Of a stretch of DNA of 64,000 nucleotides, positions 2,576 through 51,696 are shown one piece after another (positions within the stretch are counted from its first letter, which is position 1; each line of letters begins with the position of its first letter). The stretch spans positions 5,642,001 through 5,706,000 of the forward strand of contig CM075998.1 in the NCBI GenBank assembly GCA_038087875.1, in the 5' to 3' direction. The position numbers were made by a program, and so were the translations under genes. The notes beneath the pieces were generated by a model. It made no database searches, was not told the origin of the DNA, and saw only the letters and a program-made list of their open reading frames with translations. This DNA comes from Malacoraja senta (lineage: Eukaryota).

Positions 2576-3585
2576 AGGGAATCTCCGGTCTGACTTTTTT
2601 AACGGCAACCTCTTATCTATGCGATCTAAATAGCGCTAAACGGCAGCCGTTAAAATTTTTTTTAAAATTTTTTTTTTTTTAAAAGGGCACCCGCTACTCA
2701 CAGACCCACGGTCTGTCTGAGCACTCTGCGGTACACCTCCACAATTTTCTTTATTAATACTTGTATTTTATTACTACAAGTCTTTTAAATCGCCTGAAAA
2801 CTGTAAGTAAAAACTTACCTTCAGGTTTTTTACTTACCGGTTTGGTGGAGCTCTGCTCGCTCCAAACATCGGCACTCTCGCTATGCGTCTGTACGATATG
2901 ACGCGTGTGCGGCTGGACGGGCTCTTCTTCACGTAGTCACTCACGTGACTCCGAAGTAAAATTGCCTCCTTCATGCAGGTATAAGATAGCTCTCAGCACC
3001 TAGTCTTTCCTCCAGTCTTTCCATCACCTTTGGAAACTTTTATTGCTGTTTATCAACATGAGGACCAAAGTTGTACCAATGAAAGTCAAAGAAGCCATTA
3101 TGAGACTGAGAAACAAGAATAAAACAGTTAGAGACATCAGCCAAACCTTAGGCTTACCAAAATCAACTGTTTGGAACATCATTAAGAAGAAAGAGAGCAT
3201 TGGTGAGCTTACTAATCGCAAAGGGACTGGCAGTCCAAGGAAGACCTCCACAGCTGATGACAGAAGAATTCTCTCTATAATAAAGAAAACCCCACAAACA
3301 CCTGTCCGACACATCAGAAACACTCTTCAGGAGTCAGGTGTGGATTTGTCAATGACCACTGTCCGCAGAAGACTTCATGAACAGAAATACAGAGGCTACA
3401 CTGCAAGATGCAAACCACTGCTTAGCTGCAAAAATAGGATGGGCGGGTTACAGTTTGCCAAGAAGTACTTAAAAGAGCAACTACAGTTCTGGAAAAAGGT
3501 CTTGTGGACAGATGAGATAAAGATGAACTTATATTAGAGTGATGGCAAGAGCAAAGTATGGAGGAGAGAAGGAACTGCCCAAGAT

Positions 3586-4424
3586 TGAATTGAATTGAAT
3601 TGAATTAGACTTTATTAATCCCCTTATTCAGGGGAAATTCAGAAGTCCTTGCAGCACACTAATAAAATACAACATAGTATTAAAAAGAAGTTCAACACCA
3701 AAACATCCCCCCACAGTGGTCCCCACTGTGGGGGAAGGCACAAAGTCCAGTCCCCATCCTCTTGTCCACCCAGAGTCGGGCCTATTGAGGCCTCCACAGT
3801 TGCCGCCACGGCGCCCGATGTTCTCGCCGGGTGATGGTACTCCGGCATCGGGAGAACCCCCAGCGGCTAGGGGTACCAGGAACGGCCGCATTCCCACCGG
3901 AGACCGCGGCTTCCAAGCCAACAGACCGCGCCGGACGGAGCCCCACACACTGGCGATCTCAGCAAGAGATCCCAGGCTCCGGGATGTACCGTTCAGCGTC
4001 GCAGCTGGCCGCTCCACAGAACCGCTGCTCCACGATGTTCTCATCGGCGGTCCCAGTATACTGGAGTTCCAGCGCGGCGACCCAGGAAAGGCATCGCCCG
4101 CTCCACGACAGCGCTCCAGCGCTGCACCGCCGCCAAAGCCGATGTTCTGCGCCGCCACCAAAGCCGATGTTCTGGCCAGGTCCCCTCAGGGAAACGTCGC
4201 TCCAGGACCCGCTGGTAGGCTGCAAGGACAGGTCGAAGGCGCTGCTCGGAGGAAGGCAACCCCTCCGACCAGGTAGGGACTCGAAAAGCAGTTTCCCCCT
4301 TCCCCCACCACCCCCCACACATAAAAAGATTAGGCCCCCTGACTACACACTCAACATACTAAAAATAATAAAAAAAGAAGGGAAAAAAACGGACAGCTGC
4401 AGGACAGGCAGCCGTTCTGGACAG
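3586..4424 (-). mobile_element. ORF-less GC-rich non-autonomous retroposon with Rex1/Babar-like 3' tail, inserted in Tc1
   Basis: Splits the Tc1 AQD|PKHTT codons. Minus-strand 3' end GAATTTCCCCTGAATAAGGGGATTAATAAAGTCT(AATTC)n. Shares motif blocks with 37181-38208. Confidence 0.75.
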
Positions 4425-4652
4425 AAAGCATACCACCTCATCTGTGAAACACGGTGGTGGGGTTGTTATCGCCTGGGCTTGTATGGGTGCTGAAGGTACT
4501 GGCTCACTTATCTTCATTGAAGACACAACTGCTGATGGTAGTAGCATAATGAATTCTGAAGTGTATAGACACATCCTATCTGCTCAAGTTCAAACAAATG
4601 CCTCAAAACTCATTGGCTGGGCGGTTCATTCTACAGCAAGACAATGATCCCA

Positions 4653-4685
4653 GTCTGAAGAAGGGTTTCGGCCCGAAACGTTACC
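4653..4685 (+). ncRNA. Minimal type I hammerhead-ribozyme-like motif
   Basis: CTGAAGA (4655-4661), stem II GGGT-TTCG-GCCC, GAAAC (4675-4679), then GTT; palindromic ACGT stem III; stem I only ~2 bp. Confidence 0.6.
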
Positions 4686-4746
4686 TATTTCCTTCGCTCC
4701 ATAGATGCTGCTGCACCCGCTGAGTTTCTCCAGCATTTTTGTGTAC
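4653..4746 (+). mobile_element. 94-bp Penelope-like terminal mini-unit with 11-bp TSD
   Basis: CAATGATCCCA duplicated at 4642-4652 and 4747-4757; body matches the PLE terminal repeat seen next to the GIY-YIG remnant at 27836-28275. Confidence 0.9.
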
Positions 4747-5359
4747 CAATGATCCCAAACATACTGCTAAAGCAACAAAGGAGTTTTTCAAAGCTTAAAA
4801 ATTGTCAATTCTTGAGTGGCCAAGTCAATCAACCAATCTGAACCCAATTGAGCATGCCTTTTATATGCTGAAGAGAAAACTGAAGGGGACTAGCCCCCAA
4901 AACAAGCATAAGCTAAAAATGGCTGCAATACAGGCCTGGCAGAGCATCACCAGAGAAGACACCCAGCAACTGGTGATGTCCATGAAGCGCAGATTTCAAG
5001 CAGTCATTGCGTGCAAAGGATATGCAACAAAATACTAAACATGACTACTTTCATTTACATGTCATTGCTGTGTCCCAAACATTATGGTGCCCTGAAATGG
5101 GGGGACTATGTATAAACACTGCTGTAATTTCTACATGGTGAAACCAAAATGTATAAAAATACCCTTTATTAAAATCTGACAATGTGCACTTTAACCACAT
5201 GTGATTTTTTCTATTACAAATCTCAAATTGTGGAGTACAGAGACAAATAAATAAATGACGGGTCTTTGTCCCAAACATTATGGAGGTCACTGTACGTGTA
5301 CCCAGTAAATAAGAAACTGGCTGAAGGTATAAAACATTGGGGAAAAGTGGAGAAATGAG

Positions 5360-6405: not shown

Positions 6406-6682
6406 GTTTAGGAAGGAACTGCAGATGCTGGTTTAAACTGAAGATAGACACAAAATGCTGGAGTAACTCAGCGGGACAGGCAGCATCTCTGGAGAACATG
6501 GATAGGTGATGTTTCACAGAGTGCTGGAGTAACTCAGCGGGTCAGGCAGCATCTGTGGAGAACATGGATAGGTGATGTTTCACAGAGTGCTGGAGTAACT
6601 CAGCGGGTCAGGCAGCATCTGTGGAGAACATGGTTAGGTGATGTTTCAGGTCGAGACGTCCCAAAACGTCACCTATTCCTTT
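6406..6682 (-). mobile_element. PLE terminal repeat in tandem array (3 units of ~66 bp)
   Basis: TGCTGGAGTAACTCAGCGGG...GAGAACATGG(A/T)TAGGTGATGTTTCA repeated three times. Confidence 0.85.
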
Positions 6683-6964
6683 TATATCCTTTTATCTTCC
6701 CTCTTACATGTTGTTTTGTGCTTTGTAATTAAATTATTATAGTATGATAGAAATGGTTCAACGCTAAATTCCATTCAGGGAAAACAATGCTTCTGCCAAG
6801 TCTTGCAAAGAGCTCTGTGGTAAAAGGAGTTGAATCAATTGTTCCATTACATCCTCAAACATACGTTTTATCACTCTAGAAAGAACAGAATGGGGTGGAG
6901 GAAGTATTTGAAGCCAACAGTTCAAGGCATTCAATCCTCAACATCAAAAGAACGGTGAAGTTCA

Positions 6965-7485
6965 ACTCAGTTCAGTTCAGTTTAATTTATTGTCACGTGT
7001 GCCGAGGTACAGTGAAAAGCTTTTGTTGCGTGCTAACCAGTCAGCGGGAAGGCAATACATGATTACAATCGAGCCAGTCACAGTGTATAGATACATGATA
7101 GGGGAATAACGTTTAGTGCAAGGTAAAGCCAACAAAGTCCGATCAAGGATAGTCCGAGGGTCACCAATGAGGTAGATAGTAGTTCAGCACTGCTCTCTAG
7201 TTGTTGGTAGGATGATTCAGTTGCCTGATAACAGCTGGGAAGAAACTGTCCCTGAATCTGGAGGTGTGCATTTTCACAATTCTACACCTTTTGCCTGATG
7301 GGAGAGGGGAGAAGAGGGAGTAGGAGCCGAGGTGAGACTGGTCCTTGATTATGCTGCTGGCCTTGCAAAGGCAGTTTGAGGTATAAATGGAGTCAATGGA
7401 AGGGAGCTTGGTTTGTGTGATGGGCTGGGCTGGGCTGTGTCCACAATTCGCTGCACTTTCTTGTGGTCTTGGATGGGGCTGTCCC
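6965..7485 (-). mobile_element. Rex1/Babar-type LINE 3' fragment
   Basis: Minus-strand tail AAAAGCTTTTCACTGTACCTCGGCACACGTGACAATAAA followed by (ACTGA)n; RT C-terminal remnant (DSFFPAVIR). Confidence 0.75.
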
Positions 7486-8240: not shown

Positions 8241-9092
8241 ATGGTCCGTTAATGGGATCTGTTTTATCTAAACTGGACTGTTTTTAGATTCTTACAGTAT
8301 AGAAGGCAATTAAACTTCCTTGAAAGCCGTGAAAAGATGAGTTTTATCAAAAAAAGTAAGGAATTTAATAGCATAATGATCAATAAGAAATCTGCGCATG
8401 ATTTCAATGTTGTTGGATTAAATTTCCAATGTATGCTTGAGCATTTTGGACGATATATTAAAGAAAGAATTATCTGCTCTCTCAGGTTGGTATGAAAGAT
8501 CAAAAGTTCCTAAGTTATTCTAATATTTTGGAAAATAGTTAGTTTGTCCCTCAACTAATACCAGTAAAAGAAATCATCGGGTCTTTGCCTGAACCTGCTT
8601 GTGGGACTTTGTATAAATTGGATGTCTTATTTCCTACAAAAGTGATGAAATTATAAAAAATTCTTCGTTCACGGTGCTTCAGGGCTCCCTGAGATTGTGA
8701 AAATACAAATCTTTCTTTCTGACAATATTTGGCAGTGGGCAAAATGTGTCAAATTAAATTTAATGTGGATAAATGCAGAACCTTTCCCACTAGAATAAAA
8801 ATAGAAGTCATTCATAATTAATATTGCTGAACTATGTAAAAGATGCAATACAGTAAGTTATTTGGCAAAATTAGTCCATGTTGATGTTTACTTTCCATTT
8901 AAGCAGGTAGCCGTAAACAGCCGTCCACTCAATCTCTGCATCCCCATCTACCCAATCTTGAATGTCAAGTTTTGCCTTAATCACCGCCGTGAGGTGAATT
9001 TCACAGCTTCAAAATTCTCTCTCACCCTCAATCCTAACTACTTCACTTACTCCAAGCAAGCCTCCAAGGTACCATTCATAAGTCTCAAATAG

Positions 9093-9380
9093 CTTAGTTT
9101 AGTTTTGAGATACAGAGTGGAAACAGGCCCTTCGGCCCATCGAGTCCGCACCGCCCAGCAATCCCCGCACATTAACACAAGCCTACACACATATGGGGCA
9201 ATTTACACTTACACCAAGTATACAAACACAAGCCAATTAACCTACAAACCTGCATGTCTTTGGAGTGTGGGATGAAACCGAAGATCTCGGAGAAAACCCA
9301 CGCATGTCACGGGGAGAACGTGCAAACTCCATACAGACAGTGCCCGTAGCCAGGATCGAACCTGGGACTCCAGCGCTGTC
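9093..9380 (-). mobile_element. HE1-type V-SINE
   Basis: tRNA-like B box, V-domain core and CR1-like tail GGGCCGAAGGGCCTGTTTCC. Confidence 0.9.
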
Positions 9381-9852
9381 CATGCCTCCCTATTTAGCCT
9401 ACCTATCTCTAGACTGGAATGAATTAGAAGTAGAGATAGATAGGTACCCAACAGCACAGGGGAGTAAGATAACCGGGGGAAACAGGAATGCAGAGGAGGT
9501 TACGGTCAAGTAGACCATGATCTTATTAAGTTTCAGAGCAGGCCTGAACGACTGAGTGCCATCCTCCTGCTCCTAATTCTTCTGGCCATTAGCCACTGGG
9601 GAGTGATCCAAGTAAAGTAATCCAGTTGTCTTCCAATATCACTGCAAAGTAACAATTAAAGTAAACATAATGTTGAGCTATGTTGCCAAATGCTGAGACA
9701 ATCATGGTCGCACCACACCTTTCAAGCTGCAGAGAAAACAAAAGAAGCATCTAAGAATTGGGAACAGAGAACAGTTGCAGGGCTTGTGTTGGAGGACTGG
9801 TGCTGCAAGTAAGAGGAAACATCATGAAGGCACACAAAGATATTCAGCAACA

Positions 9853-10152
9853 GGCGGCATGGTGACGCAGTGGCAGAGTCGCTTACAGCGCCAAAGACCC
9901 GGCTTCAATCCCGACGACGGGTGTTGTTTGTACGGAGTTTGGACGTTCTCCTCGTGGGTTTTCTCCGGGTGCTCCGGTTTCCTCACACGCTCCAAAGACA
10001 TACAGGTTTGCACATTAATTGGCTTGGTATCAATGTAAAATTGTCCCTAGTGTGTTTAGGATAGTGTTAATGTGCAGGGATCGCTGGTCGGCACAGACTC
10101 GATGGGCCAAAGGGCCTGTTTCTGCGCTGATCTCTAAACTAAAACTAAACTA
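9853..10152 (+). mobile_element. HE1-type V-SINE
   Basis: Head, V-domain and (CTAAA)n tail. Confidence 0.9.
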
Positions 10153-11199
10153 AAGAATAGCTAATCTGGAATACTTTTTGAAGCAGAAAAGGGATAGGTG
10201 CTTACAGATAGAGGAAAGAGGAGCATATACGGTCCTGGTCCTAACTGGCATCTTGCTGGAAAGTGCGCTTGTGCAAGAGACTGGTGCGAAGGTCAGACAT
10301 AACTGTGATGTTGTGTAGCTGAATAGCCTGGGGCCACTCGCTAAACTTGCTTAGCAAAGTTCCTCAAGTGAGATGCTGTATGTACCCCAGAAACAGTCAG
10401 TACTTTCAGGAGAGGAGAAAATTCAGGCAAAAATAAAATGAAAGCCACGGCTCTGTATTTCTTTTCATTGTAAATTTTTGTGAAATCATATACAATAAGC
10501 ACCACTGTCTGTCCTGCCTCACGGTGCCTGGGACAATCCGATGTACTCTATTCCCATGAATGCTTTCACCAAATTTGCTGTAATGTCCAAACCAGATGTT
10601 TGTCACACAAGAACCAAGATTGCTAACATCATTTCACATTGGATAATTCAGCTCAAACAGCACAGAAGCCTTGTGTTCTGGCAACAATCAAACATTTAAA
10701 AAAAACATAGGAGTAATGCATAACTGTGAAGAATACAGTTCATTTCAATGCCAATTATTTTCCCCTTATTACAGTCATTCAACTGGATTCTAATACTCCA
10801 CATTCTTTCCAAATCTGCACCATGAGAGTTACAGATCATCTGCCAAAAAGACGGTAATCTCTATTCTAGAGGAGATTAATTTGTTCTAACTGAACCCATT
10901 TGAAGTTCTAGCTAAATTGAAAGAAGTGGAATATAAATTAAGATTAAGGGATCAGTGAAACACAATAAAAATAATTGTCTTTTGAAAGAGACCTTGCGCT
11001 AAGACCCTGCCTGTCCTCTCAGGATGGTGCATGGGATTCCATGCCACTATTTAAAGAAGAGCAGGCAAGTCGTCCCCAGTGCCCTGACCAATATTTATCC
11101 AACAAATCAACATCACTAAAACAGATTTTCTGGTCTATATCACATTATTTTAGTTTGTTGTTTTTGGGAACTTATATCAGCTGCCACAGTTCCTACATT

Positions 11200-11668
11200 G
11201 GGCGACACGGTGGCGCAGCGGTAGAGTTGCTGCCTCACAGCACCAGAGACAGGGGTGGGAGATTGCAACCTTCACGTGGTCCGCCCTGTTTCGACGAATG
11301 CAATCAACCTGGCGTGCACAATTAAATAAGATCAAATAGAAGAAGAAGAAGCGCCAGAGACCCGGGTTTGATCCTGACTACGGGTGCTGTCTGTACGGAG
11401 TTTGTATGTTCTCCCTGTGACCTGCGTGGGTTTTCCCCGGGTGCTCTAGTTTCTTCCCGCACCGAAAGACGTACAGATGGCTGGTTAGCATGCAACAAAA
11501 GTTTTTCACTGTACCTCAGTACATGTGACAATAAACGAAACTGATTAACTGAGGTTTCTAGGTTAATTTGGCTTCGGTAAAATTGTAAATTGACCCTATA
11601 GGATATTGTTATGTTGGTACGGACTCGGTGGGCCTGTTTCAGCGTTGTATCTCTAAACTAAACTAAAA
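11200..11668 (+). mobile_element. HE1-type V-SINE carrying two nested inserts
   Basis: Interrupted at 11251-11350 and by a Rex-type tail at ~11485-11545. Confidence 0.9.
11251..11350 (+). mobile_element. ~100-bp (GAA)n-tailed retroposed insert (RTE-type tail suspected)
   Basis: Flanked by AGC(A/G)CCAGAGAC duplication; ends AGAAGAAGAAGA. Confidence 0.65.
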
Positions 11669-12234
11669 ATTCCAATATATACACTTTGAAGGTACTTCAC
11701 TGCAATGTATTTTAGGAAATTGTGAAATGTCCCATTTAAGAAAGATAAAAGATCTGGGATTTACATCTCAGAAATGCAAAGAAAATCTACTAATTTGTGC
11801 GTCCAAATCATGAACTGCTTTCCTCAGTTCTCTCAATTCCATGCAAACACCGAGATCCCATTGTGTAGTTACAGCAGAGACAAAGAACAGTAAGTGTTCC
11901 CTCTACCAACCGCCAACACTCTCTCCCAGTTTATTAGTAATGTCAGAACACAGGCATCAAGGGGTTTAGGGACAGAGCAGAAATATGGTACTGAGATTGA
12001 GGATTAATAATGATTGTATCAAATGGCAGAGCAGGCTCAAAGGGCTGAATGGCCTCCTCTTGCTCCTATTTTTCTATGCCCACTGCACCAACGTAACATT
12101 TGCCTTCAAGATGGTCACTTCAAGATCCAAGAGAGAATAACTTAAGGATGATTTGCCCCAAATACTTCAGGTACTAAAATGGGTCAAAGGTGGCCAAAAT
12201 GGGTTCTTGAGTTGCAAAACGAGTTCTAGTTTCA

Positions 12235-12546
12235 GGGTAAAACATGGAACAGGCTCTTCGGCCCACTGAGTCTGTGCCGACCATCAATCACCTCGTTCAC
12301 ACTAGTTCTGTGTTATCCCACTTTCACATCCACTCCATGCACACTCGGGGCAATTTACAGAGGGTCAATTAACCTACTAACCCACACGTCTCTGAGATGG
12401 AGGAGGAAACAAGAGCACCCAGAGGAAACTCACAGTCATAGGAAGGACGTGCAAACACCACCAAGACAGCACCCGAGTTCAGGAAGGAAGTCGGGTATCT
12501 GGCACGATGAGGCAGCAGGTCTACCAGATGCACCACTGTGCCGCCC
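12235..12546 (-). mobile_element. HE1-type V-SINE, diverged
   Basis: Recognisable head and CR1-like tail. Confidence 0.8.
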
Positions 12547-12788
12547 ACTTTAGATGAAACACACACTTGCAATCACTGCTCAAAAGATTGCTTAATAGGT
12601 CGACCGTCATTTAACTTGCCTGCCAAAGGTCATAACGGATGGCCTGGCATTTTGGATGGTAACACCTGAATTATTTCCCAAGAGATTTAAAAAGAAACAT
12701 TGGTGAAAATGTTGAACATGGCTGAAAGGCATACTTGCCTGTTACTGGCCAATTGCTGTTGGAGGCTTGTGGAAGATTATCCCACCAC

Positions 12789-12881
12789 AGATAGACACAA
12801 AGTGCTGGAGTAACTCAGCGGGACAGGCAGCATCTCTGGAGAGAAGGAATGGGTGACGTTTCAGGACAAGATCCTTCTTCA
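12789..12881 (-). mobile_element. PLE terminal unit
   Basis: GATAGACACAAAGTGCTGGAGTAACTCAGC...GACGTTTC. Confidence 0.8.
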
Positions 12882-13383
12882 AGCCAACCAACACAGCACG
12901 TCCACTAGGCTGGGCAGGAAGCCCAACTCTTTTTGTAAGGTCCTTCCGCCATCATGATATTACTGCCACTCTGCAGGCAGAAAAACTCGTCCAGTGGAGA
13001 CATAGTCATTCAAGTCTGGACTGGCATAATATGAGCAATTGAACCACCATCCAAGTTAAAAGGTAGGTAGGCCTGGGGGGCCCTGCGGGGGTGGGGGGGG
13101 GGGGGAAGGAACTGTGACAGCAGCCCTGGCTGTTTTTTGTGGAGCCCAAAGATGTATGCCTTCTCCTCTAGGAATGGGCTTTTTTCAACTGCATTCCCAG
13201 CTGGAACAGGTGGCAAATACTACAGCAGCAGGGTGTAAATTTGGCCAGCGAACTATGCAAGAACTACATTTGTACATTAAACTGAGCAAGCGTCTGTCTG
13301 GGGCAGTAAACTCTTGCTGCACTTCAGACCCAAGGAAGGATTGCAGTGGCCACATCAATAGCAGCAGAGGGAAAGAGCACTCG

Positions 13384-13541
13384 TGTGTAGGATGGAACTG
13401 CAGATGCTGGTTGAACCCAAAGATAGACACAAAATGCTGGAGTAACTCAGCGGGACAGGCAGCATCTCTGGATGACATCACCCGCTCCTTCTCTCCAGAG
13501 ATGCTGCCTGTCCCGCTGAGTTACTCCAGCATTTTGTGTCT
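13384..13541. mobile_element. PLE fold-back unit
   Basis: Inverted arms AGACACAAAATGCTGGAGTAACTCAGCGGGACAGGCAGCATCTCTGGA. Confidence 0.85.
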
Positions 13542-13844
13542 AACTCCCATATTATCATCAGGCCTTAAACAGCAAGCCTTCAATGTCGAAGCCTGCACAT
13601 AAAGGCTGGCAAAGCAAATTAACTGCAGGTAGGCAGCGAGGGGCATTATATCCATGCAAAGGTCGGTGTTCTCAAAGAGGAACGGAAAATAGAACAAAGC
13701 TTCGAAAGAAGAACAAGTTTCCAGAGTATATTTACAAGCAGAGGTCTCATGAGGGGACACACAAACATTATTAACAACAAAAAAGTCACAAAGATAAAAT
13801 GAGAGAAAAGCCAAGAGCAAGTCCCTTTCAACAGATATGTGTTA

Positions 13845-14174
13845 AACCCCTGTCCCACGGTACGAGTTCATTCCAAGAGCTCTCCCGAGTTTGCCCTAAT
13901 TCAAACTCGGAGATTTACGGTAATGGCCGCTCGTCGGTACTCGGGGCTCTCGTGGACATTTTTCAACATGTTGAAAAATCTTCACGAGTCTTCCCGTGCT
14001 TACCTGCCGTTAGCGAGTCTTCCCGAGTACCTGCCGTTCACTTTACAAGCCGGTAAGAGACGTCCCCGAGCTCCGACGTACCCGCTACGTTCATTCTCCG
14101 TGCTTACCACGAGTTTGATTTTTTTTAAACTCTGGAGAGCTCTTGGAATGAACTCGTACCATGGGACAGGGCCA
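13845..14174. mobile_element. PIF/Harbinger-type MITE (330 bp)
   Basis: Long TIR CCCTGTCCCA(C/T)GGTACGAGTTCATTCCAAGAGCTCTCC; TTA/TAA flanks; same family as 22133-22462. Confidence 0.9.
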
Positions 14175-15059
14175 TAACTCTACACATGGAATTTCCTTCG
14201 TTGCACCACCCCCTCACTTTAAGCCATAAGGTTAGGAGCATTTCAGCAATTAGTCGCATAGCAACATTAAGAGCTTGAAGAGCTCTCGGGAACACGGACC
14301 TACTCTCTATCCAGCACCTCCTCATAACTGAAACGCACCATCACAGGCAGAAGTCTGACCAATCTCCTCTGCACTACTCTCCAGCACTATGACATCCTCC
14401 TGAAAGTGTGGTGACCAGAATGTGCTGTTCAGAATCAAAGATGGCGACTGCAGACTGGAGGTCACGCAGAAGCTCAACTGTGTGCAGGACAGGGCACTTA
14501 GCTGCCACAGAGCCAGAGGGTGGAGAATTATGGCATCTAATCCTCCTCTTTCTCCTCCTCACATCCCGCCATCCCCACTCCACAATCTCTTCTGCCTTAT
14601 AACATACACAAGGTTCAAAGCTGTTTTTTCTTACTTGCTCCAACCCTTCCACCTCAATCACGTTCTTCTGGTTTTCTCGCTTCCGATACTAAAAGGGCCC
14701 AGCAGGCAGGTGTCACATTCACCAGCCACGATCCTTGCACTTTGACAGCATTCGGGAGCAGCTTCGAGGTGCTGCTGAGTAACCAGACATAGACAGACTG
14801 CAGCCAGATCAGAGAAAAGCTCGCGTCTCAGCTCTCGGGAGCGTGCTGTCTGCTCCACTGGATGTTGACGATGACTACAATAAAAGAGCACATAAAGACG
14901 GATGACCAGGCGAAGGACATTGCCTGGATGACATGAAAGCTTGTACAAGATGTCCAGCAGAATAGAGGAATCCAGTTGAAACACTGCATGTGGTTTTGTG
15001 CAGGGCCTGGAGCTCATCATTTCCAAAGTGGGAATGGTGGCCAGTTCCATCTTAATACT

Positions 15060-15217
15060 GTGTAGGAAGGAACTGCAGATGCTGGTTTAAACCAAAGATA
15101 GACACAAAATGCTGGAGTAACTCAGCGGGACGGGCAGCATCTCTGGAGAGAAGGAATGGGTGACGTTTCGGGTCGAGACCCTTCTTCAGTCTGTTCTCCC
15201 AGCATTTTGAGTCCATC
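15060..15217 (-). mobile_element. PLE mini-unit with 15-bp TSD and intact hammerhead-like core
   Basis: TTCCATCTTAATACT at 15045-15059 and 15218-15232; minus-strand CTGAAGA-AGGGTCTCGACCC-GAAACGTC at 15162-15189. Confidence 0.85.
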
Positions 15218-15867
15218 TTCCATCTTAATACTCATGGATACAACCAGGATGGAGTGGAGTGTCTGATGACTACAGCTCCCATTGCAGTACCAGTGCTGCT
15301 CTGGAATCTCTGATCTCTTCAATCTCTCACCTTATGTCAACATCCCACCCAGATGTCTCCGTTGAGGGTATGGAGGCACCCCAGCTATCGATGCTCCAGC
15401 AGACTGCGAAACCAGCTGGTGCTCTGTCCTGGGCGAGTGGCAATTAGTCAGTTAAGTAAAATTCTGTCCACTCATGAGGTCAAAATTTGTGCTCCCAGGA
15501 CAATTCTGCTCGCTCTGATGGCCATCATGCCAGCTACCGGAGCAGAACTGCTCACTGCTGTCACAGCATCCACCATTCAAAAGGTAACAACTCCCCTTCT
15601 GCATTGGCTGCTTTCATTCACAGTTTCACTCAAATGCAGAGAGTGGCTCTCCTTTACTCCTTGTCCATTGACTGAAACCTGCCAGCTTTCCAGCACCAAG
15701 CCAATAAGTCACATTTTGCTTTGAAACCATTCAGTGTGAGAACATTGGTGGGAAACATTTTATGGGTACAATGAGTACTTTGAAAACAAAATTGACAGCC
15801 TTTCAATAACAACGTATATTTACATAGTGGTGTCCACATAGCAAAACACCCCAAGGCACTTTACAGG

Positions 15868-16090
15868 CGGGAATACGCCCTGTCCACGGGCACCCTGTGG
15901 GAGTTCCGGGACCGCTGGGCTCCGCAGGGTGTTGAATGCATTCTAGACAAGGAGTGTAAGATAATTGTACAGTCGTTTATTAAGGATGTATGTTTGTATT
16001 GTATTATGGTGGTGGGTTCTGGTTTGTTTTATTGTAGTGTAATATTATTTTTTTAATAAATTGAATACATTTTTTGAATTTAAAAAAAGG
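15868..16090 (+). mobile_element. Tx1/L1-clade LINE 3' end with TSD
   Basis: Reads REYALSTGTLWEFRDRWAPQGVECILDKEC; T-rich UTR and A-rich tail; GGC(A/G)CTTTACAGG duplicated at ~15855 and ~16091. Confidence 0.7.
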
Positions 16091-17225
16091 GGCGCTTTAC
16101 AGGAGCGTTATCAACAAAATGTAATACCAAGACACGTAGAAATATTCCAGGTGATGACCAAAACACTGATTAAAGAGTAATCAACAAAATCAAAAGGAAT
16201 AAAGAGAGGCAGAGAGATTTAAAGCAGGAATTCCAACATTTAAGGACTTGGAGCTGATAAAATAGCCGCCGATTGGTTAAACATTGAAATGAGGAATTCA
16301 TCAAGGGGCCATAATTCGTATGGCAAAGCTTTAAGGGTGCTAGATATCAAGTAACATGGAGGCAAAACTAAAACGTCATTAGAAACATTATGTAATTGAT
16401 GTAATATACAGAAACTAAAACTGATCTTACATATAGACACAGAGTACACAAAGCCTGCACACACCGCATTACTCGGAGTGGTCTCTAGATCAGCATTGCC
16501 ATTTGTTCACTAATCCCTGATCATCCTCTCCCAATTAAACACAGCTTCCAAGAGGATCAAATATCAGACATGAGTGACTCAACTACTAAGAAATGTTTAG
16601 ATGTTAAGGAGGAGCTTAAGATAACATTGTTGTTTATAAATTGAGGGAGAAAGTGAGGCTGCTGATTTTAATTTATCGCACTGATTCTGAAGTCTATTGT
16701 GTGCCTTCGCTATCATCCTTGACAAGACTGCTCGTTATTTTGAATAGCAAGACTGCAATGATAACAACAAAAACTTCCAAAACAAGGAAAAAAACAGAAT
16801 GCCTGAGAAAATAAATTCAAGTCATTCACACACTCTAATCACTGTCCTATGTGGATGAAGATGGGTCATCTCCAGAAACTTTCCAACTGCTTTATTTCTC
16901 TCTCAACCTACTTTATCTGAATATTTTGTGGACAACTTTCAAAATGGGTCTCTCATTTCCTACTGACAACAACATTCTGCTCACTTTCTTCTTCAATGTT
17001 TTAAATTTATTATAATTATGCAGTCCCTTGGGGTCAGGGGCGACTTGCTTCAACTCCGGTTCAGCAGCTGACTGATGAGCCGAACTTCTGGCATGATTTT
17101 AAATATTTAGTGAAAAGCAAGGTTGGTGCCGCGAGTGACATCTCCCTGTGGAGATTGTTGGAATGGCAGGTGGGGAAATACACTGGGGTGTGAGTGGTCC
17201 TCGATGACAATGGCGTCCCCGAGAC

Positions 17226-17549
17226 AGTCACGGTAGCGCAGCGGTAGAGTTGCTGCCTTACAGCGAATGCAGCGCCGGAGACCCGGGTTCCATCCCGACT
17301 ACGGGCGCTGTCTGTACGGAGTTTTACGTTCTCCCCGTGACCTGCGTGGGTCTTCTCCGAGACCTTCGGTTTCCTCCCACATTCCAAAGACGTGCAGGTT
17401 TGTAGGTTAATTGGCTTGGTAAATGTAAAATAAATTGTCCCTAGTGGATGTAGGATAGTGTTAATGTGCGGGGATCGCTGGTCGGCTCGGACCCGGTGGG
17501 CCGAAGGGCCTGTTTCCTTGCTGTATCTCTAAACTAAACTAAACTAAAA
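17226..17549 (+). mobile_element. HE1-type V-SINE
   Basis: Near full length, (CTAAA)n tail. Confidence 0.92.
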
Positions 17550-25730: not shown

Positions 25731-26237
25731 GATAGAGGGAGGAGGTACAGGGCCATTACTTACATTTGCATGAACCATTTGCTGCCTTATAATGCTGCAA
25801 GTGCTGGCATCTCTCCAGTATTGTCAAGAGAAATAAGTGTGAAAAGACCATTGCCGAAACCTTCCAACTAAGGTCTATCTAGTCCTTGCCCAATGCCCAC
25901 CCATGCCGTGGTCTAGCAATGGGACGGCACAGTGGCACAACGGTAGAGTTGCTGCCTTACAGCTCCAGAGACCTGGGTTCAATCCTGACTACGGGTGTTG
26001 TCTGCACGGAATTTGTATGTTCTCCCTATGACCGCGTGGGTGCTCCGGTTTCCGCCCACACTCCAAAGACATACAGGTTTATAGGTTAATTGGCTTTGAT
26101 AAGTTTTTTTTTAACAGGGCTCGAAATTAGCAGTTGCCCGGGTGCCAATGGCAACTTACAGTCCCGCCGGGCAATCTAAAAGCCATGCCATTTTGCCCGG
26201 CTTGGCAAGCAACCGGGACACCCGCCCGCCATCCGTG

Positions 26238-26452
26238 TCCGGGTCTCGGCTCTCCCCTCGGCGCTCGCTCTCGGCGCTAGCTCTCGGCTCTCCGCTCGGC
26301 GCTAGGCTCTCGGGTCTCGCTCGGCTCTCGGGTCTCGGCGCTAACTCTCGGCTCTCCGCTCGGCGCTGGCTCTCGGTTCTCCGCTCGGCGCTGGCTCTTG
26401 GCTCTCCTCTCGGCTCTCGGGTCTCCGCTTGGCTCTCGGGTCTCCGCTCGTC
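26238..26452. repeat. GC-rich (CTCTCGG/CGCTCGG) minisatellite
   Basis: Directly visible; produces the spurious ORFs at 26142-26769. Confidence 0.9.
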
Positions 26453-27616
26453 ACGGCCGGCCGCCTTATACATGCGCACTGCCACGGCCAGCACATCATC
26501 GGCCGTGGTTGTGCGCATGTGCAGCCCTGCACATGCGCACTGCCACGGCAACGTCGGCCACTTTCTCCCTCCCTTTGCATTGGAGTTGTGGCCGACATTG
26601 CTGTCTGGTCGCTGCCTCACCACGACCGTTGAAAAACAACGCAGAATCACTCCCTGGAGCTGCAGTAACTCCCTGGAGTAACTCTTGCTTCTTGGTTTCC
26701 TGGTCCTCCAAAATATTTGAAATGGAATTTAAACTGGTGGACCCACCACCACCAAACTCTGAAAAATAACAGCCTTTTGCATTTTATCTATTTATTGTGT
26801 ATATATATGGTCCATAGTATATAGACACACTGAACTTTTATCTCCTGTTCTGTATTATGTTTACATATTCTGTTATGCTGCAGCAAGCAAGAATTTCATT
26901 GTCCTATCTGGGACACATGACAATAAAATTCTCTTGATTCTTGACTTGGACAAGCAAAAAAGGGTTCTTGGGGAAAAAAAAGCTACCTTAAATTTAGTTG
27001 CGTCAGGTTGGTACCTATGGTAGGGTGAAGACTATTCCATGTTTTAATTGTGCGGGGGAACTCCATGGAGCAGCCAGCATCTCTGGATAGAAAAAAATTG
27101 GGTGACGTTTCGGGTAGAGACCCTTCTTTACATTTCCTCTGGTTTTAGTGTTTTTAGTTTAATTTAAAGATACAGCGTGGAAACAGGCCCTTCGGCCCAC
27201 CGAGTCCACGCCAACCACCGATCACCCGTACACTAGTTCTATCCCACACATCAGCGACGTAAGTCAAGAGTGTTTTATTCTCTCACGTCACAGTTAGAAC
27301 AATGAAATCCTTACTTGCAGCAGCACAACAGAATATGTAAACATAGTACTCTGTAAACAATGTTATAAACGAGAAAACAAAACTCCATACAAACAGCACC
27401 CATATTCAGGATCAATTCCGGGTCTGGCAATTTTAGGCAGCAAATTTATGGCCAATGTACTGCCCCAATAGCCTTGAACTGAATTAAAACATACAGTAGC
27501 TGTAAAGGGGGACATAGCGTCACTTAGAGATTTAAGACTGAAAATGGATAGTTTCATTTTTTTTAGTAACCAAAGTTATCAACGTATAATTTTTTGTGTG
27601 TTGGAAAATAAAATAT

Positions 27617-33184: not shown

Positions 33185-33550
33185 GTATGTCAAAGAGGAT
33201 TATTTTGAACTTCTACAGGTGTACAATAGAGGGCATATTGACTGGTTGCATCATGGCCTGGCTCGGCAACTTGACCTCCCCACCATCGAAGGGATTTATC
33301 GGCTTCTCTGCCTCAAAAAGGCAGCCAGCATCATCAGAGACCCACACCACCCTGGCCACGCTCTCATTTCACCCCTGTCATTGGGAAGAATGGAGCCTGA
33401 GAACTGTAACGTCCAGGTTCAGGAACAGCTTCTTCCCTACAGCCATCAGGCTATTAAACACTACAACCTCCAAATCAGCTCTGAATTTCAATAGACTATT
33501 ATTATTATTATTATACTGGTATTGTATGTTATTTGAGTATGTATGTGTAT

Positions 33551-33622
<72 letters not shown>

Positions 33623-33782
33623 GTGAGTGTGTATATATGCACACACTGAACTTTTTTTTCTCTCTCTCATTTACCATATTGTTTACTGTGTACTGTGTTT
33701 CCATATTGTGTTGTGCTGCAGCAAGTGAGATTGTCATTGTTCTATCTGGGACACATGACAATAAAACACTCTAGACTCTCTT
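33185..33782 (+). mobile_element. Internally deleted Rex1/Babar-type element containing (TG)n
   Basis: NFYRCTIEGILTGCIMAW, SRFRNSFFPTAIRLLN; GACACATGACAATAAA tail; (TG)n at ~33555-33618. Confidence 0.85.
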
Positions 33783-36711: not shown

Positions 36712-36888
36712 GGGGTCCCCACCTGAAACTTCACCTATCCATGTTCTCCACAGATGCTGCCTGACCCGCTGAGTTACTCCAGCACTCTGTGAAACGTCAC
36801 CTATCCATGTTCTCCACAGATGCTGCCTGACCCGCTGAGTTACTCCAGCACTTGGTGACCTTTTGGGTAAACCAGCATCTGCAGTTCA
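36712..36888 (+). mobile_element. PLE tandem terminal units
   Basis: Two ~66-bp units, reverse complement of the 6406-6682 array. Confidence 0.85.
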
Positions 36889-37180
36889 TTATTTTAAAAT
36901 TAGAGCTTACTTAATTTCACAAGAATGACAGGTTTGTGAGACACAGAGGGATCACGTGACCGTACTGGTCAGGCACTCAACTAAAGTTAACCTTGGATTG
37001 CTGCTGATAGTAGGTGCTTTAGATGTAGAATCAATGGACCTCCATCACGAGTAAGAGCAGGAGAAGAGCAGCAACCTTGCCAGAGAATGAAAGAGATGAT
37101 GCAGATAGGCCCTGGGTATGAGCCAAAAGTACAGAGTGCTGGAGTAACTCAGCGGGTCAGGCAGCATCTGTGGAGAACAT

Positions 37181-38208
37181 GCTCGCCTGCAGTCCGTCTT
37201 TTTTTTCTTTTGTTTTCTTTTGTGTTTTAGTTAAAGTTAGTTAAATTTAGTTTATTAGGTTGTGTATGTGTGGGGGGGGTGGGAGAAACATGGTTTTAGT
37301 CTCTTCCTTCGTGTCCCCCGTCTCCGTCTCCGTCTGCGCTGAGGCCTAATGGCGGAGCTGGCGGCCTCGGGGCTGTGGCAGCATTCCGGCGATGGCCCGA
37401 CTCAGGGCTGTGGCAGCGTTCCAGCGATGGCCCGACTCGGAGCTGTGGCGGTGTTCCGGCAGCGGCCCGACTCGGAGCTGTGGTGGTGTTCCGGCGGTGG
37501 CCCGACTTGGAGCTGTGGCGGTGTTCCGGCGGCGGCCCGACTTGGAGCTGTGGCGGTGTTCTGGCGGTGGCCCGACTTGGAGCTGTGGCGGTGTTCTGGC
37601 GTTCCAGCATCAGCCCAACATAGCTGTGGCGGCATTCTGGCGTTCCGGCGGCGGCCCGACTTGGAGCTGTGGCGCCGTTCTGGCGGCGGCCCGACTTGGT
37701 GCTGTGGCAGCGTTCTGGCGTTCCGGCGGCGGACCCGAATTCGGAGGCTCGGCCGCGGGCCCAGTGGACGACATCGTCGGGAGCTCGCAGGTCACAGGTT
37801 GGTGACCTGTTTTTCCGGAGCTCCCGCAACAACAGCTGCGTACGCTGGACTGGAGGGCGGCAGCTTCGGCAGCTTCGACCACCCCGGGCCACGGAGTTTG
37901 AACCGGCCCGTTCGCGGAGCACGGTTGAGCCACGGGACTTACTTACCATCACCCGGTGGGGTCACAACATCGGAGGCCTGGATCGCCTCAGCGCAGAGGG
38001 AGAACAAGGAGGGAAGAGACAAAGACTTTAAGACTTTTGCCTTCTATCACAGTGAGGTGCCTGGTGAACTCACTGTGGTGGATGTTAAATTTGTGTTTAT
38101 TGTATGTTTTTGTTACTTTTTATTATATGTATGATTGCAAGGCAACGAAATTTCGTTCAGACCGAAAGGTCTGAATGACAATAAAGGATACTTTGACTTT
38201 GACTTTGA
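37181..38208 (+). mobile_element. ORF-less GC-rich non-autonomous retroposon with Rex1/Babar-like tail
   Basis: Head CCTGCAGTCCGTC then T-run; tail GAAATTTCGTTCAGACCGAAAGGTCTGAATGACAATAAAGGAT(ACTTTG)n; motif blocks shared with 3586-4424. Confidence 0.75.
37367..37735. repeat. 35-bp GC-rich minisatellite (about 9-10 units)
   Basis: TGGAGCTGTGGCGGTGTTCCGGCGGCGGCCCGACT. Confidence 0.92.
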
Positions 38209-38209
38209 T

Positions 38210-38672
38210 GTTATGGGAAAGAGTGCAGAGAAGGTTTATGAGGATGTTGCCAGGACTCGAGAGCCTATAGGTAGAGGTTGAGTAGGCTGGGTCTCTATTC
38301 CTTGGAGCGCAGGAGGATGAGGGGTGATCTTATAGAGGTGTACAAAATCATGAGAGGAATAGATCGGGTAGACGCACAGAGTCTCTTGCACAGAGTAGGG
38401 GAATCGAGGACCAGAGGACATAAGTTTAAGGTGAAGTGAAAAGATTTTCACACAAACGGTGGTAGGAATATGGAACAAGCTGTTGGAGGAGGTAGTTGAG
38501 GCAGGCACTATTGCAACGTTTAAGTTACATATAGACACGTACATGGATAGCACAGGTTTAGAAGGATATGGGCCAAACGGCAGGTGGGACTAGTGTAGCA
38601 GGGACATGTTGGGCGGAATGGGCAAGTTGGGCTGAAGGGCCTGTTTCCACGCTGTATCACTCTGTGACTATA
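38210..38672 (+). mobile_element. CR1-type LINE 3' fragment
   Basis: GATCTTATAGAGGTGTACAAAATCATG...GGGCCTGTTTCCACGCTG. Confidence 0.9.
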
Positions 38673-50744: not shown

Positions 50745-51696
50745 TGGGAGCGGATGCCAGGGTCCGGGCGAACGTGTGTGAGCTGAGGCCGAGGTTTGTA
50801 AACGTTGCTCCAAACCCCGGCCTGGCCCTCCCTGTAGTGTTCACTGCGTCTCCCCGGGGAGAGAGAGGGGTGGAGCCGGGGCTGTGTGCGTGAAGCACGG
50901 TGACTGGAGGGGCGGGAACGCTGCCCTGGGACTGTGAGGGACCTCCCCTTCTCCAGTCCCCCTCACACCCCCCTCCCTGTCTACCCCTTTTTTCTCCCTC
51001 CACCCCTCTACTCTCTCTCCACCCCTCTCTCCCCCCTCCACCCGGGGTAGATCTACCCGAGCCGAGAGTAGATTACTCCAAAGATCCTAGAGCGGAGCTT
51101 TGGATTACTCCAGCGCGGGGGCCCCCTTAGGCGCGGGGCCCAATTGGGAGCAATCGGTCCAATCGGCTTAAGGCCGGCTCTGGGTGCATAAAGTGTCTGG
51201 TGTGGTGCATAAAGTGTCTGCCAAAGAAAGCTGGCAGTGATGAATGAACCTAGTCAGTAATGGTTAGTCAAACTTCTACAGTCTCATTTGAGATCCACAA
51301 ACCTGTCTTTATTAAGGTGGTGGAGATCTTCAAAAGCTTCACATTCCTGGGTGTGCATATCTCTGAAGATCTGTCCTGGACCCAGCACATTGATGCAATC
51401 ATGAAGAAAGCCCATCAACACCTCAACTTCTGTAGAAGATTGAGGAGATTGGTATGTTAATGAATTTGAACTTCTACTGCACAGTAGAGAGCATATTGAC
51501 TGGTTGCATTGCAGCCTGGTTCAGTAACTTGAACGCCCAGGAAGAAAGAAGACCGCAAAAAGTGGTGAACACTGCTCAGTCCATCACGAATACTGACCTC
51601 CCCATCAGCGAATGGATCTACAAGAGTCACTGTCTCAAAAAGGTATAGGAGCCTGAAAACTGTAATTCTCTACCTCAGAAGGCAGTGGAGCCCAAT

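What the first reader, a model, noticed from the sequence alone, without database searches (positions are those of the whole stretch)
3586..4424. ORF-less, non-tRNA, GC-rich retroposon family (copy A) with conserved RNA structure
Seen: this insert (minus strand) and 37181-38208 (plus strand) are very diverged but collinear. Both have head CCTGCAG(CTG)TCCGT plus T-run, TATGTGTGGGGGG..GAAAC, ACATCGT..GGAGC, CAGCTGCG, TACCATCACCCGG, GGAGGCCT, GACTTT(G)TGCCTTC, a CACAGTG..CACTGTG hairpin (here a 12-bp stem at 3708-3734), GGATGTT, TGCAAGG, then AATTTC-hairpin-AATAAA-microsatellite. I see no RT and no Pol III A/B box. Inference: a long SINE-like parasite of Rex1/Babar LINEs whose conserved islands are RNA structural or protein-binding signals. 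It inserted into the well-preserved Tc1, so it was active relatively recently.
Basis: partly seen in the sequence, partly recalled or inferred. Interest (0 to 1): 0.75.

Follow-up and report, generated by a model that had tools for sequence, protein, structure and literature searches.

The report
Gene-less LINE-dependent skate retroposon copy
This 839-base insert is one copy of a very abundant, protein-less jumping element of skates that carries a CpG-rich body and RNA hairpins, ends like a LINE and most likely borrows a LINE's copying enzyme; it is an unusual form of a familiar kind of genomic parasite, and this scan has already met the family many times.

Summary
Window 3586-4424 (minus strand) is a discrete insert in a Tc1 transposase gene. 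Uninterrupted Tc1 copies in public reads fix both borders to the base, with no target duplication and 2 bases lost. It is related to 37181-38208. The head (z 6.6), the last ~240 bases (nhmmer E 2e-6) and two unique shared 13-mers are significant. The GC-rich middle cannot be aligned. Three hairpins sit at matching places, keep pairing through compensatory and wobble changes, and two of them fold better on the sense strand.

There is no shared ORF, no Pfam or Rfam match, no tRNA and no A/B box. T7-T8 runs near the 5' end argue against Pol III. The body is CpG-island-like (CpG o/e 0.87-0.95, against 0.24 in the host Tc1).

Reads from three organisms show a very abundant family. A polyA RNA run shows 10-15-fold strand-biased transcripts.

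Best reading: a Pol II-type, ORF-less, non-autonomous non-LTR retroposon mobilised through its hairpin-AATAAA-microsatellite tail by a CR1-group (probably Rex1-type) LINE.

The partner LINE, the promoter and the Repbase/Dfam status remain untested. The scan found this family before, on other DNA of this genome. Interest is moderate.

The parts
3586..4424 (-). Copy A, the whole retroposon insert (839 bases)
   Evidence: Both borders are fixed by the empty-site Tc1 consensus from public reads. There is no TSD and 2 target bases are lost.
4290..4424 (-). 5' head. Contains CCTGCAG (4397-4403), CTG, TCCGT (4389-4393), T7 runs, an AT-rich stretch, TATGTGTGGGGGG (4311-4323) and GGGGGAAAC.
   Evidence: Head-to-head similarity with B has z 6.6 and blastn E 2e-6. 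The 13-mer is unique to A and B. The T-runs are listed.
3745..4289 (-). GC-rich, CpG-island-like non-coding body
   Evidence: GC is 65.5% and CpG o/e 0.87. There is no Pfam match and no frame shared with B. Family depth peaks at 4056-4137 and 3728-3809.
4122..4174 (-). 25-base tandem repeat, 2.1 copies (GAACATCGGCTTTGGYGGCGGYGCA in sense)
   Evidence: TRF. Loose ends at 4149 show that most expressed relatives lack about 40 bases here.
3936..3981 (-). Hairpin H1: outer stem CGGAGCC/GGCUCCG enclosing GGGAUCUC..GAGAUC
   Evidence: B has the same two-tier hairpin at 37778-37826, with a different inner stem and the same spacing between the outer arms (32 against 31 nt).
3827..3839 (-). Conserved island TACCATCACCCGG, followed by AACATCGG and GGAGGCCT
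   Evidence: Exact 13-mer found only in A and B. It opens the 3' 240 bases that nhmmer aligns.
3708..3734 (-). Hairpin H2 (CCCCCACAGUGG / CCACUGUGGGGG), preceded by GACTTTGTGCCTTC
   Evidence: 100% complementary over 12 bp, dG -28, z -4.5. Against B there are 2 double compensatory changes, 3 one-sided changes and 0 broken pairs. The family-majority variant at 3716 turns a G-C pair into G-U in the sense RNA.
3637..3700 (-). AT-rich segment resembling a LINE 3'UTR (TGAACTTCTTTTT, TACTATGTTG, GTGCTGCAAGG, AATTTC)
   Evidence: The motif grammar is shared with LINE tails at 26770-26930, 33620-33768, 52990-53167 and 27272-27420. The A tail against 27272-27420 has z 4.8.
3619..3635 (-). Terminal hairpin H3 (UCCCCU GAAUA AGGGGA)
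   Evidence: B has an 11-bp stem of a different sequence with a GAAA loop at the same place.
3611..3616 (-). AATAAA, the only one in the element
3586..3606 (-). Terminal microsatellite (AATTC), 4.6 copies
   Evidence: TRF
3043..3585 (+). Host Tc1 transposase gene, part before the insert
   Evidence: ORF 3043-3537. The Tc1 family consensus runs across the empty site.
4425..4641 (+). Host Tc1 transposase gene, part after the insert (..KHTTSSVKHGGG..)
37181..38208 (+). Copy B, a diverged relative. Head 37181-37300; 35-base VNTR 37366-37720; H1 37778-37826; TACCATCACCCGG 37944-37956; H2 38043-38082; H3 38153-38178; AATAAA 38180-38185; (GACTTT)n 38190-38208.

Best explanation
Copy A is a near full-length member of a very abundant skate family of ORF-less, non-autonomous non-LTR retroposons.

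Shown:
- It is a discrete insert with exact borders.
- The family has many copies in at least three organisms.
- It has no coding capacity and no small-RNA head.
- It has a CpG-island-like, minisatellite-prone body.
- It has three position-conserved hairpins.
- It ends in hairpin-AATAAA-microsatellite.
- A polyA RNA library contains strand-biased family transcripts.

Inferred mechanism:
- RNA polymerase II transcribes source copies from at or near the 5' head through to the AAUAAA.
- The ORF2 protein (endonuclease plus reverse transcriptase) of a stringent CR1-group LINE, probably Rex1-type, binds the terminal stem-loop and microsatellite in trans.
- That protein nicks the target and copies the RNA by target-primed reverse transcription. 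Here the result is a full-length insertion with a 2-base target loss and no duplication.
- The different terminal hairpins and microsatellites of A and B imply different partner LINE lineages.
- The GC-rich body changes by expansion and contraction of 25-35-base units, and each new copy seeds a CpG-rich block.
For: - Exact insert: borders fixed by the empty site, no TSD, no inverted repeats.
- Homology to B: head, 3' 240 bases and unique 13-mers.
- Non-coding: no shared frame, no Pfam, no protein relatives of the 177-aa sense ORF.
- Not Pol III: no tRNA, no Rfam match, no A/B boxes, and T7/T8 runs 19-36 nt from the 5' end.
- LINE-type end: a single AATAAA 25 nt before the end, a hairpin just upstream and a microsatellite.
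- Same grammar in the window's LINEs: TGCAAG..AATTTC-hairpin-GACAATAAA-microsatellite in LINE fragments whose ORF2 ends ..RFRNSFFP.AIRLLN. Their microsatellites differ from copy to copy. Relatives of that ORF2 carry APE and RVT_1 domains.
- Rex1 features from the literature: a conserved 3'UTR followed by oligonucleotide repeats (PMC6274825), and the highest genome coverage in rays (PMC13343379).
- Hairpins: kept with compensatory and G-U changes; H2 and H3 are more stable on the sense strand.
- Abundance: 8,868-16,628 contigs per DNA run laid at 80% or more, in three organisms.
- Transcription: in the polyA RNA run the first mate lies on + 10-15 times more often than on - inside the element, against about 1:1 in the Tc1 flanks. 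The RNA/DNA depth ratio is 5-250 times that of Tc1 and is highest at 4220-4301.
- CpG: o/e 0.87-0.95 in both diverged copies against 0.24 in Tc1.
Against: - The partner LINE with an (AATTC)n or (GACTTT)n tail was not found.
- A profile of four LINE tails from the window does not detect A or B. Only 2 of 12 tail pairs exceed shuffles.
- The LINE clade (Rex1 rather than another CR1-group lineage) rests on my recollection of ORF2 C-termini and on the literature, not on a tool result.
- No transcription start was seen (table 6).
- The sense reading of the strand bias assumes a dUTP-type library.
- The 5' ends of A and B differ by about 17-22 nt.
- Only two full copies could be read, so covariation rests on one pair.
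- Depth along the element is patchy rather than a simple 3'-to-5' gradient.
Confidence: 0.75

Rival explanations
1. Simple 5'-truncated copies of an autonomous LINE that has a long, GC-rich, repeat-bearing 3'UTR. The 'head' would then be the end of ORF2 plus the start of the UTR.
For: - tblastn of LINE ORF2 C-termini gives a recurrent weak match to B 37865-37972: FGSFDHPGPRSLNRPVRGARLSHGTYLPSPGG against FGNSTAGNRRALQRVVRTARHIVGGELPSLQD, 40% over 35 aa, E about 0.02.
- The A and B heads resemble the ORF-end/UTR-start of one LINE copy, 33400-33560 (z about 3).
- The last ~90 bases resemble LINE 3'UTRs.
Against: - A profile HMM of the ORF2 C-terminal domain scores B at E 0.46 and A not at all.
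- The head resemblance is absent for three other LINE copies and lies in low-complexity T/TG-rich sequence.
- Two very diverged copies both start within about 20 nt of the same head motif, which random truncation would not give.
- No coding relic lies upstream of either copy: the flanks are Tc1 and a 66-base repeat unit.
Confidence: 0.12
2. Retrocopies of a single-copy host Pol II transcript (a structured lncRNA or UTR) occasionally picked up by LINEs. These would be processed pseudogenes rather than a self-propagating family.
For: - Pol II features (AATAAA, CpG-rich 5' part).
- Strong sense-strand RNA signal concentrated on the 5' part.
Against: - Thousands of contigs per low-coverage run in three organisms.
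- Deep subfamily divergence with different tails and microsatellites between A and B.
- Many separate notes of the family in this genome.
Confidence: 0.06
3. A and B are unrelated inserts. The shared blocks would be chance matches between GC-rich, low-complexity sequences.
For: - blastn against the whole window at E 1e-3 finds no A-B match.
- The middle ~500 bases do not align.
Against: - Head z 6.6, tail 1 of 200 shuffles.
- nhmmer E 2e-6.
- Two unique collinear 13-mers.
- Matching order of three hairpins.
Confidence: 0.03
4. A DNA transposon, Helitron or solo LTR carrying a GC-rich cargo.
For: Other elements in this genome carry CpG-rich cargo, for example window 51697-52731.
Against: - No terminal inverted repeats.
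- No target duplication.
- No TG..CA ends.
- A polar structure ending in AATAAA plus a microsatellite.
Confidence: 0.02

Closest known systems
SVA / LAVA-type composite retroposons of hominoids
   Same: Non-coding. About 1 kb or more. GC-rich internal VNTR that acts as a mobile CpG-rich block. Pol II-type with an AATAAA near the 3' end. Mobilised in trans by a LINE. No Pol III head.
   Different: SVA uses the relaxed L1 machinery, ends in poly(A) and makes 5-20-bp target duplications. This element ends in a stem-loop plus microsatellite (the stringent CR1-group type) and shows no duplication. No recognisable SINE or LTR pieces were found in it. No common ancestry is implied.
SINEs with CR1-group LINE tails (for example UnaSINE1/UnaL2, HE1/HER1, V-SINEs)
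   Same: Non-autonomous. The 3' end mimics the partner LINE's 3'UTR stem-loop and repeat tail, which the LINE ORF2 protein recognises (PMC4176376 for the mechanism in zebrafish L2). Tails can be exchanged between lineages.
   Different: Those SINEs have a tRNA- or 5S-derived Pol III head and are under about 500 bases. Here there is no tRNA, no A/B box, Pol III terminators sit near the 5' end, and the length is 839-1028 bases.
Rex1/Babar LINEs (the presumed partner)
   Same: Conserved 3'UTR followed by oligonucleotide tandem repeats of variable sequence (PMC6274825). Especially abundant in rays (PMC13343379). The window's LINE fragments with APE/RVT-type relatives share the tail grammar.
   Different: The element has no endonuclease or RT and no significant relic of ORF2. 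Clade assignment of the window's LINEs was not made with a tool.
Internally deleted non-autonomous LINE derivatives (for example HAL1, NARTc/RIME)
   Same: ORF-less elements that keep LINE ends and depend on the parent's proteins.
   Different: The 5' head and body could not be matched to any LINE 5'UTR, because no full-length partner was available.

Membership tests
SINE (Pol III-transcribed) | Head derived from tRNA, 7SL, 5S or snRNA | tested here: not met
   ARAGORN finds 0 genes in the window. Rfam finds 0 matches at E<=1 in 3500-4500. For B there is only a chance mir-343 hit at E 0.28.
SINE (Pol III-transcribed) | Internal A and B boxes, and no T>=4 run before the end | tested here: not met
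   A has no A or B box with up to 1 mismatch. T7 runs at nt 36 and 49 of A and a T8 run at nt 19 of B would stop Pol III.
SINE (Pol III-transcribed) | 3' tail shared with a LINE | tested here: inconclusive
   The motif grammar is shared with four LINE tails in the window. The A tail against 27272-27420 has z 4.8 and the B tail against 52990-53167 has z 3.4, but a tail profile finds neither copy.
Non-autonomous LINE-dependent retroposon (stringent type) | Discrete insertion without inverted repeats, polar structure, 3' stem-loop plus short tandem repeat | tested here: met
   Empty site. Inverted repeats occur only as internal hairpins. Hairpin H3, AATAAA and (AATTC)4.6.
Non-autonomous LINE-dependent retroposon (stringent type) | No coding capacity of its own | tested here: met
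   No frame shared with B. No Pfam match. No protein relatives of the sense ORF.
Non-autonomous LINE-dependent retroposon (stringent type) | Many dispersed copies | tested here: met
   8,868-16,628 contigs laid per DNA run in three organisms, and two copies in this window.
Non-autonomous LINE-dependent retroposon (stringent type) | An identified partner LINE with a near-identical 3' end | not testable with these tools
No eukaryotic genome collection was on hand.
SVA-like composite retroposon | Internal GC-rich VNTR | tested here: met
   B: 35-base unit x 6.7, plus 41- and 35-base arrays. A: 25-base unit x 2.1. Length variants appear among relatives (joints).
SVA-like composite retroposon | Poly(A) tail and L1-type target duplication | tested here: not met
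   The element ends in a microsatellite, with no poly(A) and no TSD.
Autonomous or 5'-truncated Rex1-type LINE | RT, endonuclease or an ORF2 C-terminal coding relic | tested here: not met
   No Pfam match. The ORF2 C-terminal profile gives E 0.46 for B and nothing for A. Single-sequence tblastn E of about 0.02 is not significant over 150 related queries.
Ribozyme-headed retroposon (HDV-like head) | Self-cleaving ribozyme fold at the first nucleotide | tested here: not met
   No Rfam ribozyme family matches at E<=1 over 3500-4500 or 37050-38300.

The most novel reading that the evidence does not exclude
The family could be an independent, cartilaginous-fish counterpart of SVA. It would be a Pol II-driven structured RNA carrying its own CpG-island promoter. 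It would exchange 3' hairpin/microsatellite modules to exploit several LINE lineages, and it would have sown thousands of CpG-rich, transcriptionally active blocks through skate genomes. The conserved internal hairpins H1 and H2 would be binding sites for a factor other than the LINE protein, for example one acting in export, stability or loading.
Probability: 0.25. Interest if true: 0.55.

Novelty: new variant of a known kind. Interest (0 to 1): 0.4.

Why it matters
Nearly all known parasites of stringent (CR1-group) LINEs are short Pol III SINEs. A kilobase-sized element without a small-RNA head would differ from these in four ways. It would be transcribed by Pol II, carry a CpG island and a minisatellite, and have hairpins that covary. 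That would show the SVA-type strategy can arise outside primates and outside the L1 system.

It would also give a natural system for asking which RNA features a Rex1-type ORF2 protein needs. Finally, it could account for part of the CpG-rich, transcribed 'islands' in skate genomes that might otherwise be mistaken for promoters.

For annotation, these copies should be masked as repeats and not called as CpG-island promoters or genes. Copy B has an open ATG frame of 261 codons.

Tried and rejected
- Whole-window blastn with A or B (word 7, E 1e-3) found no third copy. nhmmer found only the A-B pair.
- MAFFT global alignment of A and B is unreliable in the middle, so I used local tests instead.
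- The 177-aa sense ORF of A against 5.8 billion proteins gave 0 hits, so spurious ORFs could not be used to harvest copies.
Neither full-length partner LINEs nor further skate loci could be fetched. The one large protein search therefore served only to show that the window's LINE C-terminus belongs to ORF2 proteins with APE, RVT_1 and PF09004.
- Two metagenome scans with core motifs gave 0 hits, then 119 chance 16-mer hits with no blastn similarity to A or B.
- The idea that the head is the end of LINE ORF2 plus the UTR start has z about 3 with one LINE copy only, in low-complexity sequence. Not adopted.
- The idea that the 3' body is an ORF2 C-terminal relic rests on suggestive tblastn alignments, but profile E is 0.46. 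Not adopted.
- The idea that the 66-base repeat unit in front of B is the native head of the family: of 21 such units in the window, only B's is followed by the head. B lies in a local cluster of these units, and the 9-of-11 match of A's first bases is probably chance. Not adopted.
- Hairpin H0 (4242-4272 / 37336-37373) is not better than shuffles.
- The HDV-like or other ribozyme head (a lead from earlier notes) has no Rfam support.
- Literature searches found no description of this family. Repbase and Dfam could not be queried.

Full report
**What is there**

Read on the minus strand, window 3586-4424 starts CTGTCCAGAACGGCTGCCTGTCCTGCAGCTGTCCG. Then come T-runs and an AT-rich stretch, followed by TATGTGTGGGGGG..GGGGGAAAC. 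Next is about 550 bases of GC-rich sequence. The element ends with GACTTTGTGCCTTC, a perfect 12-bp hairpin, GGATGTT, an AT-rich stretch, GTGCTGCAAGG, AATTTC, a short hairpin, AATAAA and (AATTC)4.6.

It interrupts a Tc1 transposase gene encoded on the plus strand. Public reads of three organisms were laid on 3400-4600. Their many uninterrupted Tc1 copies give the consensus ...GGAACTGCCCAAGATCC|AAAGCATACC across the site (joints and loose ends at 4425). In the window, CAAGAT is followed by the insert and AAAGCATACC resumes at 4425. There is no target duplication, two target bases (CC) are lost, and there are no terminal inverted repeats.

**Is it related to 37181-38208?**

Yes at the ends, not demonstrably in the middle.

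- Local alignment against shuffles gives head-head 36 against 18.8+-2.6 (0 of 200). Tail-tail is 30 against 17.5+-2.3 (1 of 200). Middle-middle is 28 against 23.2+-3.1 (21 of 200).
- nhmmer with B finds A 3605-3840 at E 2.2e-6 in the whole window.
- The 13-mers TATGTGTGGGGGG and TACCATCACCCGG occur only in these two elements, in the same order and orientation.
- A collinear chain of exact 8-mers scores 84 against 47+-13.
It lies before hairpin H1 in A and after it in B.
- The 5' ends are close but not identical. B starts at CTCGCCTGCAG, right after a truncated 66-base repeat unit. A has about 17-22 more bases upstream of CCTGCAG.

**Structure**

Three hairpins occupy matching positions.

- H1 is a two-tier stem just after ACATC. 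It lies at A 3936-3981 and B 37778-37826, with 32 and 31 nt between the outer arms. The inner stems are entirely different (GGGAUCUC/GAGAUC in A, CAGGUCAC/GUGACCUG in B). Against shuffles z is -1.9 for A and -4.6 for B.
- H2 shares the core CACAGUG/CACUGUG. Around that core there are two double compensatory changes, three one-sided changes to G-U or U-A, and no broken pair. z is -4.5 and -4.3.
- H3 lies directly before AAUAAA. It is UCCCCU/AGGGGA in A and an 11-bp stem with a GAAA loop in B.
- H2 and H3 are more stable on the sense strand than on the antisense strand. For H2 in B the values are -21.8 against -13.2 kcal/mol, because of G-U pairs.
- The commonest family variant at 3716 turns a G-C pair of H2 into G-U in the sense RNA.
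- With only two full copies this is good but limited evidence that the RNA hairpins are maintained.
- A fourth candidate, H0, is no better than shuffles.

**What it is not**

- It is not coding. A and B share no frame. Six long ORFs have no Pfam match. The 177-aa sense ORF has no relatives. The 261-codon ATG frame in B runs through a 35-base repeat, a length that is not a multiple of three.
- It is not a Pol III SINE. There is no tRNA, no Rfam match and no A/B box, and T7-T8 runs lie within the first 50 nt.
- It is not ribozyme-headed.

**The body**

- GC is 65-67% and CpG o/e is 0.87 (A) and 0.95 (B). The window as a whole has 0.46 and the host Tc1 has 0.24.
- B holds a 35-base array of 6.7 or more copies. 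A holds a 25-base unit of 2.1 copies.
- Related contigs show many internal length variants (joints and loose ends at 4149 and 4208).
- The body behaves as a CpG-island-like minisatellite region.

**The family and its RNA**

- At 80% likeness, 8,868-16,628 contigs per DNA run from three organisms were laid on the 1.2-kb stretch.
- Inside the element, depth peaks at 3728-3809 and 4056-4137. It is 5-10 times lower over A's own tail (3605-3686). This fits earlier notes that relatives share a core but carry different tails.
- In a polyA RNA-seq run of one of these organisms, first mates lie on the plus strand 10-15 times more often than on the minus strand inside the element. In the Tc1 flanks the ratio is about 1:1.
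- With the usual dUTP chemistry this means sense-strand transcripts. The library chemistry was not verified.
- The RNA/DNA depth ratio is about 0.2e-3 in Tc1, 1-7e-3 in the 3' half and 42-54e-3 at 4220-4301. Transcripts are therefore enriched for the 5' part that only full-length copies have.
- No sharp start or end was reported.

**The likely partner**

- The window holds several 5'-truncated LINE fragments whose ORF2 ends ..RFRNSFFP.AIRLLN.
- Their 3'UTRs end ..TGAACTTTT..TATGTT..GCTGCAAG..AATTTCATTGT-hairpin-GACAATAAA plus a microsatellite. The microsatellite differs from copy to copy: (ACTCTTG), (GAACT), (TAAACC), (TTTAG).
- Relatives of this ORF2 C-terminus carry Exo_endo_phos, RVT_1 and PF09004.
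- A and B follow the same grammar, but the sequence similarity is weak. The A tail against 27272-27420 has z 4.8 and the B tail against 52990-53167 has z 3.4. The other ten pairs are not significant, and a profile of four tails finds neither element. The true partners, with (AATTC)n and (GACTTT)n tails, are not in the window.
- Rex1 is described as having a conserved 3'UTR followed by oligonucleotide repeats (PMC6274825) and as most abundant in rays (PMC13343379).
- Assigning the window's LINEs to Rex1 rests on my knowledge that L2 and CR1 ORF2 C-termini look different, not on a tool result.

**Rivals**

- The main rival is simple truncation of a LINE with a long GC-rich 3'UTR.
  - tblastn gives a suggestive match of B 37865-37972 to the ORF2 C-terminal domain, covering the TACCATCACCCGG island. 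A profile HMM of that domain scores it at E 0.46 and finds nothing in A.
  - The head resembles the ORF-end/UTR-start of only one of four LINE copies, in low-complexity sequence.
  - Two deeply diverged copies starting within about 20 nt of the same motif also argue against random truncation.
- The processed-pseudogene, chance-similarity and DNA-transposon readings are unlikely, for the reasons given in the rival section.

**Limits**

- I therefore could not harvest copies, define the family's 5' end statistically, find the partner LINE, or test covariation beyond one pair.
- Repbase and Dfam could not be queried. Four literature searches found no description of the family.
- The run of N near 50.4 kb was left untouched.

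**Verdict**

It is a non-autonomous LINE-dependent retroposon with maintained hairpins. The Rex1 partner, the promoter and the recency are not established.
- The kind is known. The form is unusual: Pol II-type, kilobase-sized, CpG-island-bearing, VNTR-containing, with a stringent-LINE tail.
- This scan has already noted the same family many times on other DNA of this genome, and has followed it up with the same general conclusion.

Noticed in passing
window 4642-4757: A ~95-base unit (GTACACAAAAATGCTGGAGAAACTCAGCGGG...CTTCTTCAGACT) is inserted in the same Tc1, flanked by the direct repeat GGGATCATTG. The window holds 21 copies of its core.
   Followed up: partly
window 6449-6648 and 36724-36852: A subfamily of that unit (..GTGGAGAACATGGATAGGTGA..) forms 66-base tandem arrays of 3.0 and 2.0 copies. 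Copy B abuts a truncated unit of this subfamily at 37122-37180.
   Followed up: partly
window 26110-26940: This is a different GC-rich, non-coding element (CpG o/e about 1.0). It has a 25-base VNTR (26244-26419) and the canonical LINE tail ..GCAAGCAAGAATTTCATTGTCC..GACAATAAA(ATTCTCTTG)n, and it lies right after a tRNA-SINE-like head and a T9 run. It suggests that several GC-rich bodies are joined to this type of tail in this genome.
   Followed up: no
window 37865-37972 (copy B): One frame reads FGSFDHPGPRSLNRPVRGARLSHGTYLPSPGG. It resembles the LINE ORF2 C-terminal motif FGNSTAGNRRALQRVVRTARHIVGGELPSLQD (40% over 35 aa). The match is not significant by profile (E 0.46), but it would place the TACCATCACCCGG island on the LPS motif.
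   Followed up: yes
proteins P0001, P0013, P0023, P0029, P0035, P0137: Pfam PF09004 (ALKBH8_N) matches fish and elasmobranch LINE ORF2 proteins just after RVT_1. In P0137 it sits together with an RVT_1 piece inside an NLR/SPRY-type protein. The Pfam family seems to describe a LINE-derived segment.
   Followed up: no
window 48027-49434 (+): RT-bearing ORF fragments (..YADDLVVF..) belong to a LINE different from the RFRNSFFP-type fragments at 51260-51648 and 52909-52978.
   Followed up: no
window 6959-6982, 17529-17548, 59840-59861, 26927-26945, 33766-33780: LINE fragments with the same ORF2 C-terminus end in different microsatellites: (GAACT), (TTTAG), (TAAACC), (ATTCTCTTG/ACTCTAG). Tail repeats therefore vary by lineage.
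   Followed up: partly
window 55682-56086 (-) and 38210-38600 (+): CR1-type ORF2 C-termini (..VQRRFTR..ERRRLRGDLIE.YK..RTRGH..) are present. One is an intact 134-aa ORF, and the other forms the 3' flank of copy B.
   Followed up: no
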